A DNA stretch of 62,591 nucleotides, filler included, from Platydemus manokwari (lineage: Eukaryota): NCBI GenBank assembly GCA_037951405.1. It is 6 parts of 6 records of this genome, joined end to end, with 100 filler letters (N's around TTAATTAATTAA, not from the genome) between each part and the next. Parts side by side here need not be neighbours in the genome. Positions count along the whole stretch, not along the records: positions 1 to 11,962 come from JBBMOY010375555.1; 5 more parts are not named here. One strand, given 5' to 3'. The notes under the pieces are model-generated. The model saw only the letters and a list, made by a program, of their open reading frames with translations. It had not been told where the DNA came from and ran no database searches. The position numbers were made by a program, and so were the translations under genes. How positions within the stretch are numbered: position 1 is the stretch's first letter; the number at the start of each line of letters is the position of its first letter. This document shows positions 1-10,055 of this stretch, piece by piece.

Positions 1-3000
1 GCTTCGAGTATGAACTCAGTTATTTATTTGTTGATTATACGATAATAAAATTATTTATTGGTGTAAACGAATTTTTATTTGATTAAAATATTCCTTGTCC
101 GGTTTCAATACAAACAACAATTAATAGGTTTTAAAAAATTATTTATTTAAAATATCGGGGTACGTTTGGGATAATTTTCTTATTCTCAAAATAAAATATC
201 CATTGCAAGGATTCTCTGGGAGGAATTTTTATTGAATCCAATAAATTGATGAGGGAATTCAAAATTAACATTGCTTTTGTTAGGTTTAATAAAGTATAAG
301 ATTGCAAATTTTAGCTTTACCAAAAGGTACTGATCAGCATTTACATCAACAGCTCCAAAATTCATCAAAAATGCTACAAAAATCAAATACAAAAATGTCA
401 TATTACTTGGCTTCCAACTACCAGTTAGTCATCTTTACATCAGTACTTATACGTGAAATTTGTGTATCACGTTTTGATTTGTTATTTGGTTTCTCAAATT
501 TAAATTGGATTTATCAATTTTCTAAGATTTGTATTTATATTGCACAACGAGTGACATCTTGGCAGAGACTGCCAGTCTATCTTTGTCAGTAACTTTGCCT
601 ACTGCGATTTGACAATGTTCTTTAGCTCTTAGCGAATTCAAATTCAAGAGAACTTTGTGACTATAATTTTTCGAGTGTATTTTGGAGTTAAATTTTCAGT
701 GCACATTCCCTCACCATACTTCCTCACGATCATATTTCATATTGAACACGATCCTCACTATTTATAAGGTTGTTTGTTTGTTTTGTTTTATTTTAACTGC
801 CTACATTTTTAAAACTTATTTTCGGACCAATCACAAGCACACAAAATTAAAATCTAAAATAAAAAAATTCCATGCACACACAAAATTTGAATTCAAAACC
901 AAAAATTCATAAATAATCTTTAAAACTCTTCGCAACTGATTCGAATCTTTCAGAAAGAATTTTTTTATGAATTCGCAAATTTTGTTTCCAAACTAGTTTT
1001 TGAAATGCGTTTTTTTTTATTTCGACAAAGACAATTGGAGTCAGATGAAAAAATGGTCAGCTTAGAAAAAATAATGTCAATAAAATCAACAATATAACCA
1101 ATATCGATACAGTATCAGCTTCATTTATTACTTTGTTCTCCAGAAGAGATCTTAAAAAGTCGCGCAATAACTAGAAATTACTAAATATACTTTTATATTT
1201 AAATAAAAATGAAAAACAAAGAACTTTTTATATAAATGATAAAAATAATCTTTGTAAATAATGATGTAACAAAGGGAAATTGATATGTAATTGATAATGT
1301 TTTCTATATCGTGATTTAAAATATAAGATTTTGTATCAGGTGTTTGTTAGTTATTTTCCCGGGTATACAAATCCAAAGTCTGAAATAATGAAATCACATA
1401 ACGAAAGAAAAAAAAATCAAATTATCTCATACCTAGTTCTAGGACGAAAGTATTAGTGATTGATGGAGAAATTTGTTTTCAATAAAGAGAATAAAATTTC
1501 TATGACGAAAACGCATATTATGATAAAATAATTCCGTATTTTTCAGACAATTTCTTCAGTAAATCTATTTTATTAATAAAGTTATTTAAGATAAAACCTT
1601 GAATTAAAACATTAAACATGGGAAATTTCTTGGAAAAGAAATCCTTAGAGAAGAATATTCATGCCCCAAGATATTAAATTAAATTATTATTTTATTATTA
1701 ATATAATATTAGTTTGACGGATCGAATATTGAGAGGTGGAACATTATTTGCATTCGACATTGGTCCTAATTTCAGACAATTTTGATATAGCCTGCATATG
1801 TTGTTTCTAATGTCATTATAAATCGATCTTCAATAAAATTTCTTTTCCTAGTGAATCTAACTTTAGGAGTAAGAGTGAAAATAGAAAATTTAATTAAATC
1901 ACAACATACTGCTATTAATATGATTAGAATTATTATTAATGTTATTTTTTATAAAATTATTATAACAAATATTATTATTGTTAGCATTGTTGTAAAGAAA
2001 TATATTCTGAATGTATTTTTAAAAATTTAACAAAAGAAATTAAAAAAATTGCATTGCATAAAAATAGTTTTGTGAATAATGAAAGACAAAAGAGAGAACA
2101 AAGAAGCATTATAAAAATTTAACAAAGATTCTTACTTGTATTTCTCGAGAAATAATTTAAGAAGCTATGCTGGCATATGAGAAAATTCTTCTAAAATTTT
2201 TTCAATAAATATACTGCTGAGATTCACAAAAAAATGACAAAATTAAAATAATCGGTAAAGTAACCTCTGGAATAATATTTGAGAATTAGAAATGCAAATT
2301 AATTATATGAAAGTGGAATAATTTACAAATCAATGAAAATATAAAGGGCAGCAAAAAATTTTAAAAAAAAAAGTCAAAGTAATTGCGAGTATTCATTATG
2401 AATTAAAATTTAAAAAAATTTGAAAATCCGAATTTTATGAAATATTAATTGGTTTGAATAATTGTTATCAAAATATAATATGATGTCGTGACTTTTCAGT
2501 TCGTCTTTAATGCGTGATTTACAAAGTAGTAGCGGCTTACAGTATTAACGAAAATTTCAAATCAAATAATAAGAATAAAATAAATAAATATCAAAAAATA
2601 ATAAGAGAAAATCCAAAATATTAAAAATCTAAGCAATTTATGAAATATTTAATGATTCTAATTTTACATCAAACGCCGGCAAATAACAACCAGTAATAAA
2701 ATTAGAATGAAGGCAAACTCATAGGAATCTTAAAATAAAATTTCGCCATCAATCACATTTCCAAACATTGCTTATGAGGAAACAAAAACTCAAAAACTTC
2801 AATGTAGAAGTAAAATTTATATATTTTGTTGAAAATCTTTTGTTGAGAATTTTGAAAATGATGATAAAATATAAAAAAACTGCCCATTATAATTTGGTTA
2901 TTGATTTGAACAAAAGGATTCCTTTTTAACAGAAAAAAATTGATTTGCCAACGAAAACTTTTTTTGCATAAATTTCCGAAATGCTTATTTGCCACTGGGA

Positions 3001-3869
3001 ACAGTATTTTGGGGAATTAGTTGAATGACAATTTGTCAGTAGTAAAATATTGTAATTATGATTTAGATGACAACAAACGAAGTCAAGATAAAGAATCATT
3101 AAAGGACAAAACATTCCACTGATGAATTGGTGGTTAAATTGATTTCAGCTTGTTTAAATGATTCGATTTATGCTTTAAAGGCTGATTTAAGATATTGTTA
3201 ATTAGAATTATTATTTCTATTTTATGGAGATTTTTCAATGAATTACCATCGAGAAATTGAATTGATTGAGATTTATCTGATTTGTGGCAGATTTCACTGA
3301 TTTAGTTTCATGAATACCAAAAATGTTTCTCTCATAGCGTTCGGATTTTTACAAAACGGTTTTTTATACTCATTAATATGCTGGTTTTGAACTTATTGCT
3401 CTATAATCTTTGATCCAATGAATTGAAGCCCAAGACTGATTTTGACAAAACCATTTACTTTTTAGCGTTACGCAGTTGTTATATTGGGATATCCCTCACA
3501 AATATAAAATCAATTTTAATCCTGCAAACAACAATTAGTTGAAATATAGATATAGGGAATCTCAAATTTCGATATACCATAATTCATAACATAAAGTAAA
3601 ATATAAATGTATTACAGAACGATAATTTGCTTGAATATTTTGGCTAAATATGCTTTTGCGCCCAGAAGCTTTTAGATTCGTTTTTGGTTCAAATTTTATG
3701 AAATATTAATAAGCAACATTGCAACCATGCTTTTGGATTTGATTCTGAGAAGAACAATGTCAAAAAAGCATATAAGATAAATAATATGATGATGGAAAAT
3801 GTAAAGAACATATAATATATAGAGAATATTTAAAATATATAAAATGCATAAAAATGAAAGATATAGAAA

Positions 3870-4406
3870 TGTTGGGTATTAATGAACAATTAGATCTCAA
3901 AATTATATTACCAAAATCGTTACAATCTTAATCACAACAACTACAATTAAATATATTTATTATCAAAGCTGGTTTATCATACAAGATGAAATCAACACCC
4001 AAACTCAAATACAGAATAGAAAGTAACCAAAAAAACTGGTTTCTGAAAATCACAGAAAGTTAAGATTAATACACAAGTTACCGACCAAACAAGACTGACA
4101 GTTACTCATGGAACTCAACCTCTTTCATATACCTATTTGGTGTGTCTGCTTGATATAAGAGGTATTCGTTTTCCATTTGCGGAATTTGTTCTTAGGTCGG
4201 TCTGCTTACTATTTGCAGATATTTGAGCTTGATGCCTTTTTTAGGTATGTGCCAGTCGATTCTTAGCTTCTAAATGTAGATTAATATTAAATTAATCTGA
4301 TTGACTGATGGCACAAGTGCTTATTTGATCTGTGTGTGTCGACTCCTTTGAGAATTATTTCCTTTGTTCCTGCATTCATTTTGATTGATTTGTGATTTAC
4401 CCAACA
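3870..4406. mobile_element. Solo LTR (537 bp)
   Basis: Begins TGTTGGGTA and ends TACCCAACA, a perfect 9-bp terminal inverted repeat with TG...CA ends. Flanked by a 4-bp direct repeat GAAA (3866-3869 and 4407-4410). No internal coding sequence. Confidence 0.7.
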
Positions 4407-5100
4407 GAAAAAATGGAACTTTTGAGAATTTTATATAGACTATTAGCCAAACATATTATGATGTGCATGTTTTAAAATGGGTTTTTATTTGTTCGTAAGG
4501 CACGTGTGCATACTAACACCAGAGTCTGTGTATCGAGGCTTTAAAATGATTTTTTGAGATTTATTTGAGATTAAGTTTTTGCGATTGACTTCCTCTACCT
4601 CAAACACAAGCTAGATATCATCTTGGTATTTATTGAGAATATAATAATAATAATAGAATGATCTACCTTTGAAAAATGGTGGTTTAAAGTTTATAATTAT
4701 TTTTCTATTTAAAATTCTTGCAAATCTTCCCATCCAAGTCACAATAAAAAAGCTTCAAAATTTCAAAAATATTTTAATATACAATTAAAAAAATCTGCAA
4801 AATAATTATTTTTCTTCTTCACAAACATTTATTATCAATTTCAGTAAAAATTATCTTCCGAATATACAAAATTCGTTGACTTCCTCAAATTATATTATAA
4901 ATAGTGAAAATCACTGTTGGCATATATGAATGCAATTCGAGCAAAAGAAATCACCCGTGCAGTCTGATAAATTGTTCTCCGCTATAATCACTAATTTTAT
5001 GACAAAGGCACGTAAAGATTTTTCTATTTATATTAGTTGATAAAAAAAAGATAAATAATTTTATCTGTATTCGCTGTTGTAGACCCACGGACCATGCTTC

Positions 5101-5126
5101 ATATATATATATATATATATATATAT
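5101..5126. repeat. (AT)n microsatellite
   Basis: Uninterrupted atatat run. Confidence 0.95.
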
Positions 5127-7453
5127 GAACTAAATTGCTTTGGTACCAAATTACCTTGGTGCCAAATAGAGGTCTAAATTATGTTTCGGTTAAAAGAGTA
5201 GGAGTCGCATCACTTCCCTATGAAATTCGCCAATCATATTTCATATTATAGATATAATAGTTAATATAGTTAATTTATATTATCGATAATATATAATCTG
5301 GTATATGTGATGTCATTCTGTCGAATCATTTTTTGATGATGAATTTATTCTCATTTGGATCTTATTAATAAAATTCTTGTGAATTTGTTAAGATAATTAA
5401 CAGAATTAATCGATCGATCGATGATATAATTAATAATTTTAAATTTAAAATATTCAAAAATAAAATCTTATTTACAAGTATTTAGAATTAAAAATAATTT
5501 TCTTATGAAAATTTACGCAGATATGAGTCCAACCCCGAATTTCTTTTAGTTAATTTAGTTATAAATTAAAACTAAATCTCACAAATTCAGGTTAAATATA
5601 AGCTAAGAATCTCCTTCTGATTGTACAACAAACATTCATAACTGAAACCATTGCTTTTACTTAAATAAAGCAACAACAACTCCACTAATAGTGCTACTGA
5701 TTTTACACAATGTAACGCTCTACTGTTAAAATCTTGCAACTACACTTGCTTCAGGAAAATACCGTAAATTGCAAATTATTATTCTAACTTAAATTTTTGT
5801 TCTTATTAGAAATGACAAATTTGGACCCTCCTAACATTTCGGTTTCGACATGATCTTTTGAAAATCCAAACATGCTTTTCTTTAGATCAAGCTAAATCCA
5901 GTTTATTTTGACAGTCTGAAATTAGTGAAAAATTGTTCCAGTATATCCAATAATCATTAAGAATAAAATTAGTTTCAGGAGTACATATTTGGAAAAGCTC
6001 ATCTGACGTTCAGCTGATCTGCAACGAGGATTCAATGTATATAAATCTTCTTGTTTCATTAAAATATCACAATTATAATCGTATTTCACGAATTCATTTA
6101 GACATGAGAAGCATTTATAATAGCTTTGACATTTTTATTAAAAACAAATCGATAAAATCAATAATTCAAATTTATGATATAATTCTTATCAAGCTAAATA
6201 TTTCATATTTTATCAGATAATATAATTAATACATAATTAATATATAATTAATTATTAAAGATATTTAAACCGTACCTGATAGCAACTATCAATATTTTAT
6301 TTATTCCATTGTTATTCATTTTTACATATCTAAATTGATGTATCAAAGCAAATCGAGTTCAATTTTAAACGAGATGCACACTGATTACGATAGGGAAGCT
6401 GAGCTGCAATAGATACAAATCCCAATAGATGTTTGAATATCTAATCTATTCCCAGTTGCATGCTGGTAGCTATTAGTATTTAAAACATTGTATTTTCAAA
6501 TATTCGACTATCTTTCCATCATTTTAAGCCGACTTTACAAGCTACGATCAGACATGGCAATGTTTTACATAGTTGAGCTAGTCAAAAAAGATGTAAATGA
6601 AGACGTTCAGTTATATTTTCCATAATAGATATTCCAGCTTAATCCACATTGTATACATCAACCTGATAAACTCGCTTTGCTCTTCATTGATTGTAAAAGT
6701 TATTATTTAATTAGATAGGATTATAATATAGTCCGGAATTAAGCTTCTTTTGGTATCATTTTGGAGGGTTGATGCTCTACTGTGCTTTAGATTAATATCA
6801 GTTCCTTTACTTGATTATTAATTCACTCCGGCGGAAGTGCATTGGGAAAATTATAGGTTTTCAAATCAACATTCACTGATTGGACTTCTGCTTTCAATCC
6901 AAAGCTGCCAACAGAAAATAACAACCTATCAGATAGGTGTTATTTAAGCTAGTATTTATTTTATTTAATTAAAACAAATAAATATACAGAATATAATTTA
7001 TATAGGGTAACCTAGTGCACACTTTGACACCCTAAAATATGACAATAAAATATCGTTAACATACTTTATAAGAAATTTTTAAATTTGAACATAAATTTTT
7101 ATTTTTGTGTAATTTTGTATCATATTTTTCAACTAGTTATACTAGTTGATAATATGTATTTTATATAATAATTATAATTAATTATATTATAATAATTATT
7201 TTTTAATTAATTATGAGATTGAGCTACAATCATCTATCATACACGGAGCTCAATCTGTAATCCGTTATGAATTTGATTTTCATTCTCCGATGGGATTTAT
7301 TCTTAAGGCAAAAATGCGTCGTAATTTATTGCCTGTCAGTGTTTTAAAATCCTGTCGGGTCCTGCGTGAATTTTAAGCCACAATATAGTAATCCTGAGCT
7401 TTGTATTACTTGATGAATTGTTCCCAAAATTATTATATAAACAATTTGTTATT

Positions 7454-7510
7454 TTCTATATTTCTTTTAGGCCCGGGCACTGATGAGGCCTATGGAAAGC
7501 CGAAATAAAA
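7454..7510 (+). ncRNA. Hammerhead ribozyme motif 1 (type III topology, partly decayed)
   Basis: Core CTGATGA at 7480-7486 and GAAA at 7502-7505. Stem II is GGCCT-atgga-AAGCC (one mismatch). Stem III is TTCTAT/ATAAAA (one mismatch), with an AUA cleavage triplet ending at 7460. Stem I (TTTCT/GGGCA) is weak. Confidence 0.6.
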
Positions 7511-7560
7511 CTACCATCATCATCATTGTAGCTATTGTTCTTGAAGGTTTCGAGGGGTCG

Positions 7561-7616
7561 TCCTATAAATCTCTGAACTGGGATACTGATGAGGCCTATG
7601 GAAGACCGAAATAGGA
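7561..7616 (+). ncRNA. Hammerhead ribozyme motif 2 (type III topology)
   Basis: Stem III TCCTAT/ATAGGA (6 bp), cleavage triplet AUA ending at 7567. Stem I ATCTC-tgaact-GGGAT, with an A.A mismatch next to the core. Core CTGATGA 7586-7592, stem II GGCCT-atgga-AGACC (one mismatch), GAAA 7608-7611. Confidence 0.8.
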
Positions 7617-7650
7617 AGAATTTTCAACAAAAGGTAGCTTATTTATTTAT

Positions 7651-7948
7651 TGTAACTTGACCATTTAATATAGGACAATAGCAGTGAAGAACAAAGAAAA
7701 AACTCCAACAGAAACTCTTAGAAATCTTTTACAAACAAAAATAAAGGCACAAGGCATAGATCAATGCACACAAAACTAACAAAATATATCAAGTGAGTTC
7801 TGAGCAAAGCTTGCTGGTCCTTCTTGATTCGAAAATATTCATTTTTTCGGGTATTGATTCCGTGTGTGATTTGATTTTTGACTGAGACTTATTCTGTAGT
7901 CGCGATTCTGATTTCATATTTTACTGGGTATCCTTGTGATCAATTACA
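7651..7948. mobile_element. Possible short solo LTR
   Basis: TGTAACTTGA...TCAATTACA imperfect terminal inverted repeat with TG...CA ends. Flanks TTTAT/TTTAC (5-bp TSD with one mismatch). Confidence 0.35.
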
Positions 7949-9039
7949 TTTACATTTCAGACAGTGTAAATTAACACGAACAATAATCTAATGCAGGAAT
8001 TGGTGGCAGTGATAATTGTGATTGACACAACGACATTATTAAAACTTCCACAGTAAATGATAACACAAAGAAAATCAAAACCATTGGCTGAGTTAAACAC
8101 CAAGGTTTGATAACCAATGTTATTATAAACTGTATTTTGTGATAAAAACCGATGAAATCAATTAAAGGCGGTAAAAAGATAAATATCGCAACTAATTTTA
8201 ATATGAGTTTAGAATATGTTAAATTTTATACTGTCGAATATAAAACTTCAAAATTTAAAACCGCCTTTGCTTCAATAATCAATCAAATTTTCTCTTTCAA
8301 TTGTAGATGTCTTTGTTGGATGAAATTCGTTCATCTTCCATAGTGGTTGCAACTCCTTAACACGGTTGTGATTAAATCTCCTGGAAAATAATTCAATTTT
8401 TAGATTGATTGAGAATATCGATTTCTTATATTTGAGTTTCAGATATAATTAAAAGGCTGGTTTTTCAATATTACCACGCATCAATAAATCCTAGATTTTC
8501 TTTAAATAAATAATAATTTCTTTCGAAGGGTTATATTAACGAATAGTTGTTTTTGGAAATTCATTAATGATACTCTGTTCAGATACTGATGAGACTTGTG
8601 AAATAAGATTTGAGTCACTTTTATTTAATGTTGTTTTATTCCTAATTTTCTTTCATATTAGAAAACGGACGAAATTTATAATTTAGAAATTAGCCTGTAA
8701 TTGTTTGGAATTAAGAGCAATTCAATTAAATCTTTACTGACTACAAAGACTCGTTAAGAAATTAAGACTCATTAAGAACCTTTTCATTTGACAACACATT
8801 GACAATGATTACTGATAAATTCGTTGTGGTATAATATATCTTTTATTATCGATTTTTGTCTTTCTAAGGTTCCTTGGTGGCCATAGTAAAGAGATCTATT
8901 AAAATTTTTTTTGATAGATATGTATTTAATTTCAGGTTCATCAATGGCTGATTCTGAAATTTTAGAAATCTATAAAATCAGATTTAAGGTTGATATATGT
9001 GTATAAGGCTGTTCAATAGAGACGAAATCTTGCAAAAGA

Positions 9040-9479
9040 AAAATGGTTTGACATGTTGGAACCCTTGTTTTAATACTTAAGCATTTGTAATTGCAGAACC
9101 ACACAGCCATGGCAATCAACCAATCAACAGATGGCTTAGATGGAAAACGATAATTTGAAAAGTGGAAATAGCCACACAGCAATACACACACAGGGATTGA
9201 CCAATCTCGCATAGAAAAAAACCAAAAAAGCCAATAGAAACATGAGAAATAAAAAATCAAATGAAAATGTGGTATAAACGTTATAAAAAAATTGTGCACA
9301 GATTTCGAATATAAATACTGATATAAAGGTGGAAAACTGACACTTGAAAGTTAGGTTTTGGTTGTAATTTTCAAATACTGTGCTAAGTTTTAAAGTCGTA
9401 CTGATTAGTACGTGTTGTGGAAATAAAATTTGCAACCTTCGATTTTTGGTGTCAGCAATTATTTCGTGAATCCAGAATT
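9040..9479. repeat. Dispersed repeat, copy 1 (copy 2 in opposite orientation at about 51739-52205)
   Basis: The reverse complement of this segment (e.g. AAATAATTGCTGACACCAAAAATCGAAGGTTGCA) aligns with AAATAATTACTGACACCAAAAATCGAAGGTTGCA from 51752. Diverged similarity continues for about 450 bp. Confidence 0.8.
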
Positions 9480-10055
9480 TAGAAATAACGGAGCTTTTAA
9501 CCTTTTCAAAAAATTTCTGAACAGCAATTTTATTTCATGTAGCGTTAGTAGCGATGTTTTATTTTTTTAATAACATTACAACAGATAAATATTATGGCAA
9601 TAATAATTTTATAATCATTATTTTTTGTATTCATTATATTAACTCCATAAGAAGCAAAACAAATTATTCTTTGTTTTTAAATTAGTCTGCACTTTTAATG
9701 TCAATGTAAATGCCATTAGTAGAATCGCTGTAATTATTCTCACTCGGGGTATAAATGAAAGATTAATAATTTTATTACCCATATTGATAATGTGCATTAT
9801 AAAAGGAAATATTAAATCTACATTGAAACCGAGTTGTAACAAACACTTTTGCCTTGTAAACCCAAAATTGAACAACAAATATCACTCTTTGAAATTGGTT
9901 TTCTCAAGAAACAAGAAATCAATTAAGCTAACAGTGACCTTAAAATAATAATGATAATAGATAAAATTAATAAATCCATAAAAAACAGATATAAAGATCA
10001 TATTCTAAGTAAATTAACGTGATGAAACTTAATAATTCCTTATTATGATCTATAT

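What the first reader, a model, noticed from the sequence alone, without database searches (positions are those of the whole stretch)
7454..7616. Tandem pair of type-III hammerhead ribozymes bracketing a 107-nt unit: possible minimal retrozyme or circular-RNA cassette
Seen in sequence: two CUGAUGA...GAAA cores share stem II. Each copy has a different single mismatch (AAGCC and AGACC), so the consensus GGCCU-augga-AGGCC is perfectly paired. Both have CUAUA 18-19 nt upstream, pairing with the A-UA after GAAA, which gives type III topology with AUA cleavage triplets at 7460 and 7567. Stems I and III differ in sequence between the copies but keep complementarity, which suggests past selection on structure. 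In copy 2, loop 1 starts with U (UGAACU) and loop 2 ends with A (AUGGA), the pattern of the loop-loop contact in natural hammerheads. Established: animal genomic hammerheads are mostly type I (Penelope pLTRs, satellite-like retrozymes), while type III is typical of plant LTR-retrozymes and viroid-like RNAs; tandem ribozymes release monomers that can circularise. Inference: double cleavage would excise 7461-7567 (107 nt), short for a retrozyme monomer. This copy looks decayed, so active relatives may lie elsewhere.
Basis: partly seen in the sequence, partly recalled or inferred. Interest (0 to 1): 0.85.

Follow-up and report, generated by a model that had tools for sequence, protein, structure and literature searches.

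The report
Decayed twin-hammerhead LTR-like repeat copy
The two ribozyme-like motifs are real but belong to a worn-out copy of a roughly 0.8-kb mobile repeat, present in hundreds of copies in this invertebrate genome, whose best-preserved copies carry two plant-style (type III) hammerhead ribozymes about 125 bases apart.

Summary
Both hammerhead cores are present, at 7480-7505 and 7586-7611. This is not chance: the genome holds at least 142 near-identical cores, against 0 for the reversed control.

They are not a free-standing 107-nt cassette. They lie in the 3' quarter of a 733-bp repeat copy (6938-7670). Its family starts TGTTA and ends TTAACA, and this copy is flanked by a 4-bp duplication (TAGG). 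Perfect 4-bp duplications flank 7 of 31 copies (P about 2e-8). That is the signature of an LTR-type integrase.

Well-preserved relatives carry two complete type III hammerheads about 125 nt apart: A cleaves after AUC, B after AUA. They fold as type III by free energy alone.

Ribozyme B is nearly complete but has three helix mismatches.

I found no paired LTRs, PBS, tandem arrays or RNA data, and the 125-nt interval is not unusually structured.

Best reading: a decayed solo-LTR-like copy of a retrozyme-like element in an animal. This kind has been described mainly from plants. It is a new variant of a known kind, and its function is untested.

The parts
6934..6937 (.). 5' copy of the 4-bp target-site duplication (TAGG)
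   Evidence: The same four bases, TAGG, directly flank both ends of the element.
6938..7670 (+). 733-bp copy of a dispersed non-coding ~0.8-kb LTR-like repeat. The family starts TGTTA and ends CTTAACA; this copy ends TTTAATA.
   Evidence: Own-genome matches start sharply near here. The multi-copy alignment loses conservation outside these ends. Summed DNA contig depth is about 700-10,000 inside the element and 9-25 in the flanks. There are no ORFs of 70 aa or more.
7480..7505 (+). Remnant of hammerhead A. Only CUGAUGA, stem II (GGCCU/AAGCC, one C.A mismatch) and GAAA survive. Its own stems I and III and its cleavage site are deleted.
   Evidence: Alignment to family copies. The minimum-free-energy fold is not a hammerhead. 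The family model scores 55.4 bits, with non-canonical pairs in stems I and III.
7560..7617 (+). Hammerhead B, type III and nearly complete. Stem III 5' strand 7560-7566; predicted cleavage between A7567 and A7568; stem I 7568-7585; core 7586-7592; stem II 7593-7607; GAAA 7608-7611; stem III 3' strand 7611-7617. It has three helix defects: 1.1/2.1 A.A, a stem II C.A, and the outermost stem III pair G.A.
   Evidence: sequence. (72.4 bits with family model R1). (the minimum-free-energy fold keeps stem III only).
7671..7674 (.). 3' copy of the 4-bp target-site duplication (TAGG)

Best explanation
Window 6938-7670 is one old, mutated copy of a non-coding repeat of about 0.8 kb. The repeat was inserted by an LTR-type (retroviral-like) integrase and is most simply read as a solo LTR.

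In the founder of the family, the 3' quarter of the unit carried two type III hammerhead ribozymes about 125 nt apart:
- A: stem III UCCUAU/AUAGGA, cleavage after AUC, stem I UGUCUC/GAGGCA.
- B: the same stem III, cleavage after AUA, stem I UAUCUC/GGGAUA.

Inferred mechanism, by analogy with plant LTR retrozymes: RNA transcribed through such units cuts itself at these sites and leaves 5'-OH and 2',3'-cyclic phosphate ends. A cellular RNA ligase can then join those ends. In a complete element (LTR, internal region, LTR) this would release and circularise the transposition intermediate. Having two ribozymes per LTR would add redundancy and would shed a 125-nt by-product.

What is shown: the repeat family, its ends and TSD, the ribozyme anatomy, and the decay of the window copy.

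What is inferred: LTR identity, transcription, cleavage, and any circular RNA.

The window copy itself is very probably inactive. A has been reduced to a core by deletions, and B has three helix mismatches.
For: Repeat family:
- 142 core matches against 0 for the reversed control.
- 97 matches to the 3' end and 136 to the 5' end.
- DNA depth is 50-200 times that of the flanks.

Ends and TSD:
- A sharp 5' edge and a sharp 3' edge.
- TG..CA termini.
- A perfect 4-bp TSD in 7 of 31 copies, against a null rate of 0.97%, P=1.7e-8.
- Several further copies match at 3 of 4 bases.

Ribozymes:
- Natural copies such as L047 and L050 fold as exact type III hammerheads by minimum free energy.
- 87% of helix cells are paired, against 33-46% when the partner columns are slid.
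- A and B share only the 59-nt ribozyme, with unrelated flanks.
- They differ by a compensatory G-C/A-U pair in stem I.
- Rfam Hammerhead_3 recognises them below threshold (30.8 bits, E=0.004).

Host is an animal: the COX1 contigs use TGA=Trp and ATA=Met.

Literature: plant LTR retrozymes have type III hammerheads in their LTRs, 4-bp TSDs and many solo LTRs (PMC4918200).
Against: - No paired LTRs, internal region, PBS or PPT were found. About 200 contigs with a copy each hold a single unit.
- Flanks of 49 3' ends and 26 5' ends share nothing, apart from one different repeat family.
- None of the 3' flanks printed begins with a TGG-type PBS.
- Which strand of the unit is transcribed is unknown.
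- Only 13 of 92 motifs look intact, and no sampled A-B pair has both ribozymes intact.
- Variation within the family looks like neutral decay: 87.0% paired against 86.4% in shuffles.
- RNAalifold predicts no consensus structure.
- Rfam scores stay below the gathering threshold.
- There are no RNA runs, so expression, cleavage and circles are untested.
Confidence: 0.6

Rival explanations
1. The ~0.8-kb unit is the LTR of an ordinary protein-coding LTR retrotransposon (Gypsy or BEL type) that happens to carry hammerheads. It would not be a non-autonomous retrozyme.
For: The same TG..CA ends and 4-bp TSD. No internal region has been seen, so its coding status is open.
Against: No copy is followed by a shared internal sequence, a PBS or a pol-like ORF. 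Hammerheads in the LTRs of autonomous LTR elements are not described in the papers read (PMC4918200, PMC7761336).
Confidence: 0.15
2. The ~0.8-kb unit is itself the complete mobile element: a single-LTR-like non-autonomous unit integrated directly, not a recombination product of a two-LTR element.
For: Every sampled copy is a single unit, and many have their own TSD. The retrozyme model allows solo-LTR-length cDNAs made from circular templates (PMC4918200, Discussion).
Against: The unit has no terminal direct repeats, PBS or PPT inside it. No known mechanism fits. Old LTR families are commonly all solo.
Confidence: 0.12
3. One reading: the tandem pair is a minimal retrozyme or circular-RNA cassette. 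Its 107-nt monomer (125 nt in the family) would be the functional, mobile product.
For: Two same-strand type III ribozymes with identical stem III strands would, after double cleavage and ligation, rebuild a complete ribozyme on a 125-nt circle.
Against: No locus has more than two ribozymes and there are no tandem arrays. The repeated part is only the 59-nt ribozyme. The interval is not more structured than shuffles. The pair always sits inside the larger unit with its own ends and TSD. At this locus ribozyme A is a remnant.
Confidence: 0.08
4. A non-autonomous DNA transposon (for example Ginger-like, with a 4-bp TSD and TGT..ACA ends) that carries hammerheads.
For: The 4-bp TSD and the 5-6 nt inverted termini TGTTA/TAACA.
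Against: The terminal inverted repeat is only 5-6 nt long, typical of LTR ends and not of longer transposon terminal inverted repeats. This contrast with Ginger elements rests on my own knowledge.
Confidence: 0.04
5. A chance resemblance to hammerhead cores in AT-rich DNA.
For: Rfam gives no hit in the window.
Against: 142 matches against 0 for the control. Family copies fold as complete hammerheads. The family model gives E=5.6e-18 for copy B.
Confidence: 0.01

Closest known systems
Plant LTR retrozymes (Cervera, Urbina and de la Pena 2016, PMC4918200)
   Same: Type III hammerheads lie inside an LTR-type unit with TG..CA ends and 4-bp TSDs. The element is non-coding. Many copies are solo LTRs. 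The ribozymes occur as monomers or dimers.
   Different: The host is an invertebrate animal. The unit is about 0.8 kb, against about 0.35 kb. There are two ribozymes per unit only 125 nt apart, instead of one per LTR with 600-1000 nt between sites. The sequence is AT-rich (window 27% GC) against >55% GC. No full-length copy, PBS, PPT or circular RNA has been found. The cleavage triplets are AUC and AUA.
Metazoan non-LTR retrozymes and Penelope-like pLTR hammerheads (PMC7229834; bioRxiv 10.64898/2026.07.22.740005)
   Same: Hammerhead-bearing, non-coding, low-GC repeats in animal genomes.
   Different: Those carry type I ribozymes, often with a weak stem III, in multi-copy tandem arrays of 150-400 nt. 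They have longer or no TSDs and highly self-paired monomers. Here the ribozymes are type III with a 6-7 bp stem III, never more than two per locus, the TSD is 4 bp, and the interval is unstructured.
Rfam Hammerhead_3 (RF00008)
   Same: The same core, three helices and an open stem III. cmscan aligns family copies end to end.
   Different: Scores are 19-31 bits against a gathering score of 48.5, so standard annotation misses the family. The window copies do not register at all.

Membership tests
Hammerhead ribozyme, type III | Conserved core: C3 U4 G5 A6 N7 G8 A9, G12 A13 A14, the A15.1-U16.1 pair, and H17 not G | tested here: met
   All are present in window copy B (7566-7567, 7586-7592, 7608-7611) and in 47 of 92 sampled family motifs. 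Window copy A keeps the two core strands but has lost its own U16.1/H17.
Hammerhead ribozyme, type III | Three helices, with stems I and II closed by loops and stem III open | tested here: met
   The minimum-free-energy folds of natural copies L047 and L050 give exactly this structure. 87% of helix cells are paired across 55 copies. In window copy B the helices are weakened, and in copy A they are absent.
Hammerhead ribozyme, type III | Rfam RF00008 gathering score (48.5 bits) | tested here: not met
   The best family copy scores 30.8 bits. There is nothing in the window at E<=10.
Hammerhead ribozyme, type III | Mg2+-dependent self-cleavage at H17 | not testable with these tools
   This needs in vitro transcription of natural copies.
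LTR retrozyme | A hammerhead embedded in an LTR-type unit with TG..CA ends and a 4-bp TSD | tested here: met
   (7 of 31 perfect TSDs, P=1.7e-8). The window copy has TAGG on both sides.
LTR retrozyme | Two LTRs flanking a short non-coding interior with a PBS and a PPT | tested here: not met
   No contig holds two spaced units. There are no shared flanks. No TGG-type PBS follows the 3' end in the copies printed. The fragmented assembly limits this test.
LTR retrozyme | Expressed as self-cleaved linear and circular RNA | not testable with these tools
   No RNA run holds the sequence.
Metazoan non-LTR retrozyme | A type I hammerhead in every unit of a tandem array, with a highly self-paired monomer | tested here: not met
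   The topology is type III. There are at most two ribozymes per locus. The interval z-scores are +0.1 to +1.5.

The most novel reading that the evidence does not exclude
This may be an animal lineage of LTR-type retrozymes. Its LTR would carry a ribozyme pair that, besides processing the element's RNA, sheds a ~125-nt RNA able to close into the smallest hammerhead-bearing circle known. It might also reflect transfer of type III hammerhead elements between plants and invertebrates.
Probability: 0.12. Interest if true: 0.85.

Novelty: new variant of a known kind. Interest (0 to 1): 0.55.

Why it matters
Current accounts place type III hammerheads and LTR retrozymes essentially in plants, and type I non-LTR retrozymes in animals. 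A family of hundreds of copies in an invertebrate, with an integrase-type footprint and two type III ribozymes per unit, blurs that split.

The family falls below Rfam's threshold, so routine annotation would miss it.

It gives a concrete test case for two questions. Do LTR-type retrozymes exist in animals? Where did the plant elements come from?

The window locus itself is only a decayed relic.

Tried and rejected
- Rfam on the whole window and on a 281-nt slice: no hammerhead hit.
- RNAalifold on 55 copies: no consensus pairs predicted.
- Exact-pattern scans of metagenome and viral contigs: 0 hits.
- Sequencing-run search: one DNA run and no RNA. Laying that run's contigs gave only depth and boundaries, with no empty-site allele and no circular junction. 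The 'go back' joints at 7613>7505 are cross-alignments of family copies that lack the deletion.
- Search for terminal direct repeats inside the unit: none longer than 11 nt apart from the A/B ribozyme repeat.
- All-against-all comparison of flanks, looking for an internal region. Only loci L023, L025 and L026 clustered, and they proved to be a different repeat that shares just the last ~150 nt.
- Pfam scan of the window's 8 ORFs: nothing.
- ORF lists of the long related contigs: no ORF of 150 aa or more.
- Conservation profile along the unit: ribozyme B looks most conserved. I rejected this as evidence because the loci were chosen by matching the ribozyme.
- Type I / Penelope reading: rejected on topology and TSD.
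- I did not try to name the host species. From memory its COX1 resembles that of heterobranch gastropods; this is untested.

Full report
**Observation**

The sequence holds two hammerhead cores on the + strand:
- CUGAUGA at 7480-7486 and 7586-7592.
- A shared stem II, GGCCU-AUGGA-AAGCC in copy 1 and AGACC in copy 2.
- GAAA at 7502-7505 and 7608-7611.

The repeat finder reports them as a 29-nt direct repeat, 93% identical and 106 nt apart. Rfam's cmscan finds no hammerhead in the window, not even at E<=10 in a 281-nt slice.

**It is a repeat family, not chance**
- The core pattern with up to 2 mismatches occurs 142 times in the window's own genome (911 Mb in about 2 million contigs). The reversed control occurs 0 times.
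- A covariance model built from 55 copies with the type III structure returns at least 150 matches of 62-90 bits.
- In the window, that model scores copy B at 72.4 bits and the copy A remnant at 55.4 bits.
- Contigs of the only public run that holds the locus (a DNA run) give a summed depth of about 700-10,000 across 6949-7680, against 9-25 in the flanks.

**Anatomy of the family**

In better-preserved copies two ribozymes sit about 125 nt apart on the same strand.
- Ribozyme A reads ..GUCCUAUC | UGUCUC UGGUCC GAGGCA CUGAUGA GGCC(C)AUGGA(A)GGCC GAAA UAGGAC.
- Ribozyme B reads ..GUCCUAUA | UAUCUC UGAACC GGGAUA CUGAUGA GGCCUAUGGAGGGCC GAAA UAGGAC.
- Both have every conserved core base, a 6-7 bp open stem III, a 6-bp stem I with a 6-nt loop, and a 4-5 bp stem II.
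- Natural copies L047 (A) and L050 (B) adopt exactly this type III fold as their minimum-free-energy structure.
- Across 55 copies, 87% of helix cells are standard pairs, against 33-46% when the 3' partners are slid by 1-3 columns.
- A and B are alike only over the 59-nt ribozyme; their flanks do not align.
- A and B differ by a two-sided G-C/A-U exchange at stem I position 1.2/2.2 (19 against 30 copies) and by U-G/U-A exchanges at two other pairs. I read this as both ribozymes having been kept by selection in the founder lineage.
- Within the family, variation looks like neutral decay. Shuffles give 86.4% paired against 87.0% observed, and RNAalifold predicts no consensus structure.
- Of 92 distinct motifs sampled, 47 keep the core and 13 keep the core plus all helices. 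No sampled pair has both members intact.
- Rfam Hammerhead_3 aligns family copies end to end, but at 19-31 bits, under its 48.5-bit threshold.

**The window copy**

Aligned to family members, ribozyme A has two deletions.
- About 16 nt are missing upstream of the core. This removes its stem III 5' strand, its cleavage site and its stem I 5' strand.
- About 19 nt are missing just after GAAAU. This removes its stem III 3' strand.

That flank happens to resemble the ribozyme's 5' part and was brought into range by the deletion. The resulting helix would be a few A-U pairs, and the minimum-free-energy fold does not use it. So 7460 is not a credible cleavage site, and the 107-nt product is an accident of this locus.

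Ribozyme B (7560-7617) is nearly complete, with predicted cleavage after A7567. It has U-to-A at position 1.1, the stem II C.A mismatch, and a lost outer stem III pair. Its minimum-free-energy fold keeps only stem III.

**What the ribozymes sit in**
- Own-genome matches to the upstream sequence all begin sharply near window 6960. Alignment of more copies moves the true start to a TGTTAUAUAAGC motif, at window 6938.
- Conservation ends about 60 nt after ribozyme B, at ..CUUGACCACUUAACA, window 7670.
- The unit is 0.7-0.85 kb. The window copy has no ORF of 70 aa or more, and the unit has no terminal direct repeats.
- In the window it is flanked by TAGG on both sides (6934-6937 and 7671-7674).
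- Among 31 copies with both ends, 7 have a perfect 4-bp duplication and 5 match at three of four bases. Pairing the flanks of different copies gives 0.97% perfect matches, so P=1.7e-8.
- TG..CA termini with a 4-bp duplication are the footprint of an LTR-type integrase. Plant LTR retrozymes are described with exactly this TSD (PMC4918200).
- Pattern matches for the 5' end (136), the 3' end (97) and the ribozymes never place two spaced units on one contig.
- Flanks of 49 3' ends and 26 5' ends share nothing that could be an internal region.
- None of the 3' flanks printed starts with a TGG-type primer-binding site.

Every sampled copy therefore looks like a solo unit.

**A second context**

In three loci (L023, L025, L026; full contigs L054-L056) only the last ~150 nt of the unit, ribozyme B plus the tail, is embedded in a different, low-copy repeat longer than 3 kb that continues past the TAACA. 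It has no ORF of 150 aa or more. I could not classify it.

**Is the 125-nt interval a small circle?**

Four natural A-to-B intervals fold no better than dinucleotide shuffles, with z between +0.1 and +1.5. This is unlike the highly self-paired retrozyme and viroid-like RNAs described in PMC4918200 and PMC7229834. There are no arrays of three or more ribozymes. No RNA run is available. The circle is therefore possible in principle, because both ribozymes share stem III and ligation would rebuild a complete ribozyme. It is unsupported by data.

**Host**

COX1 contigs of the assembly read TGA as Trp. They give the canonical Met residues only if ATA is read as Met, which is the invertebrate mitochondrial code. 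The assembly is therefore an invertebrate animal. Four full-length COX1 matches were found; three were fetched, and their DNA is 71-79% identical. This suggests several mitotypes or species in the sample. I did not try to name the species.

**Comparison with what is known**
- The papers read state that LTR retrozymes with type III hammerheads are found primarily in plants, with 4-bp TSDs and many solo LTRs.
- They state that animal hammerhead repeats are type I, tandem and non-LTR, probably dependent on Penelope-like elements (PMC4918200, PMC7229834, PMC7761336, bioRxiv 10.64898/2026.07.22.740005).
- PMC7761336 mentions elements with type III hammerheads in insects only as work in preparation.
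- This family therefore works like, and is built like, the LTR part of a plant retrozyme, but in an animal. It has two ribozymes per unit, is AT-rich, and lacks a demonstrated two-LTR form.
- It fails the membership tests for metazoan non-LTR retrozymes and for Penelope pLTR hammerheads.

**Verdict**

The locus is a relic. The family is a new variant of a known kind and deserves experimental follow-up on its intact natural copies.

**Note on method**

Before I recognised the LTR-like nature of the repeat, I computed a majority-rule profile of it in scratch files. I used it to locate the boundaries, as a query to place the unit in other contigs, for a self-comparison and in the window alignment. 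It is not reproduced here. No repaired or consensus version is proposed.

Noticed in passing
L054:2997-3142, L055:2075-2220, L056 (reverse strand) about 6117-6254; also L057:189-298: The last ~150 nt of the unit (ribozyme B plus the tail ending TAACA) is embedded inside a different, low-copy, non-coding repeat longer than 3 kb that continues past the TAACA. It is a shared 3' module between two repeat families, and I could not classify it.
   Followed up: partly
L088 (G000:C1153215:4691-4747, minus strand): An unrelated, seemingly perfect type III hammerhead: AUC site, stems GAUUGAU/AUCAAUC, UGCAG/CUGCA and GUCC/GGAC. It scores 44.6 bits with Rfam RF00008, just under threshold. It is single-copy at up to 3 mismatches.
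   Followed up: partly
L089 (G000:C1699800:796-850, minus strand): Another type III hammerhead candidate, scoring 43.6 bits, with a GUC site and a CUGACGA core. It lies in a GC-rich context unlike the rest of the assembly, so it may come from another organism in the sample.
   Followed up: no
L051, L052, L053 (G000:C1514745, C1389203, C1344449) and C1440324: Four full-length COX1 matches were found. All use TGA=Trp. DNA of the three that were fetched is 71-79% identical. The assembly probably holds several mitotypes or species.
   Followed up: partly
window 7161-7214: An AT-only microsatellite-like stretch inside the element (periods 5-24). In the DNA run its summed contig depth exceeds 10,000, far above the rest of the element.
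   Followed up: no
window about 7215-7256 and about 7284-7360: Two long imperfect hairpins are conserved in the family upstream of the ribozymes (perfect 14-bp and 12-bp stems in well-preserved copies). Their role is unknown.
   Followed up: no
L082 (G000:C1199655:1359-2326): Two partial copies of the unit overlap in inverted orientation, giving a palindromic contig. This is probably an assembly artefact.
   Followed up: no
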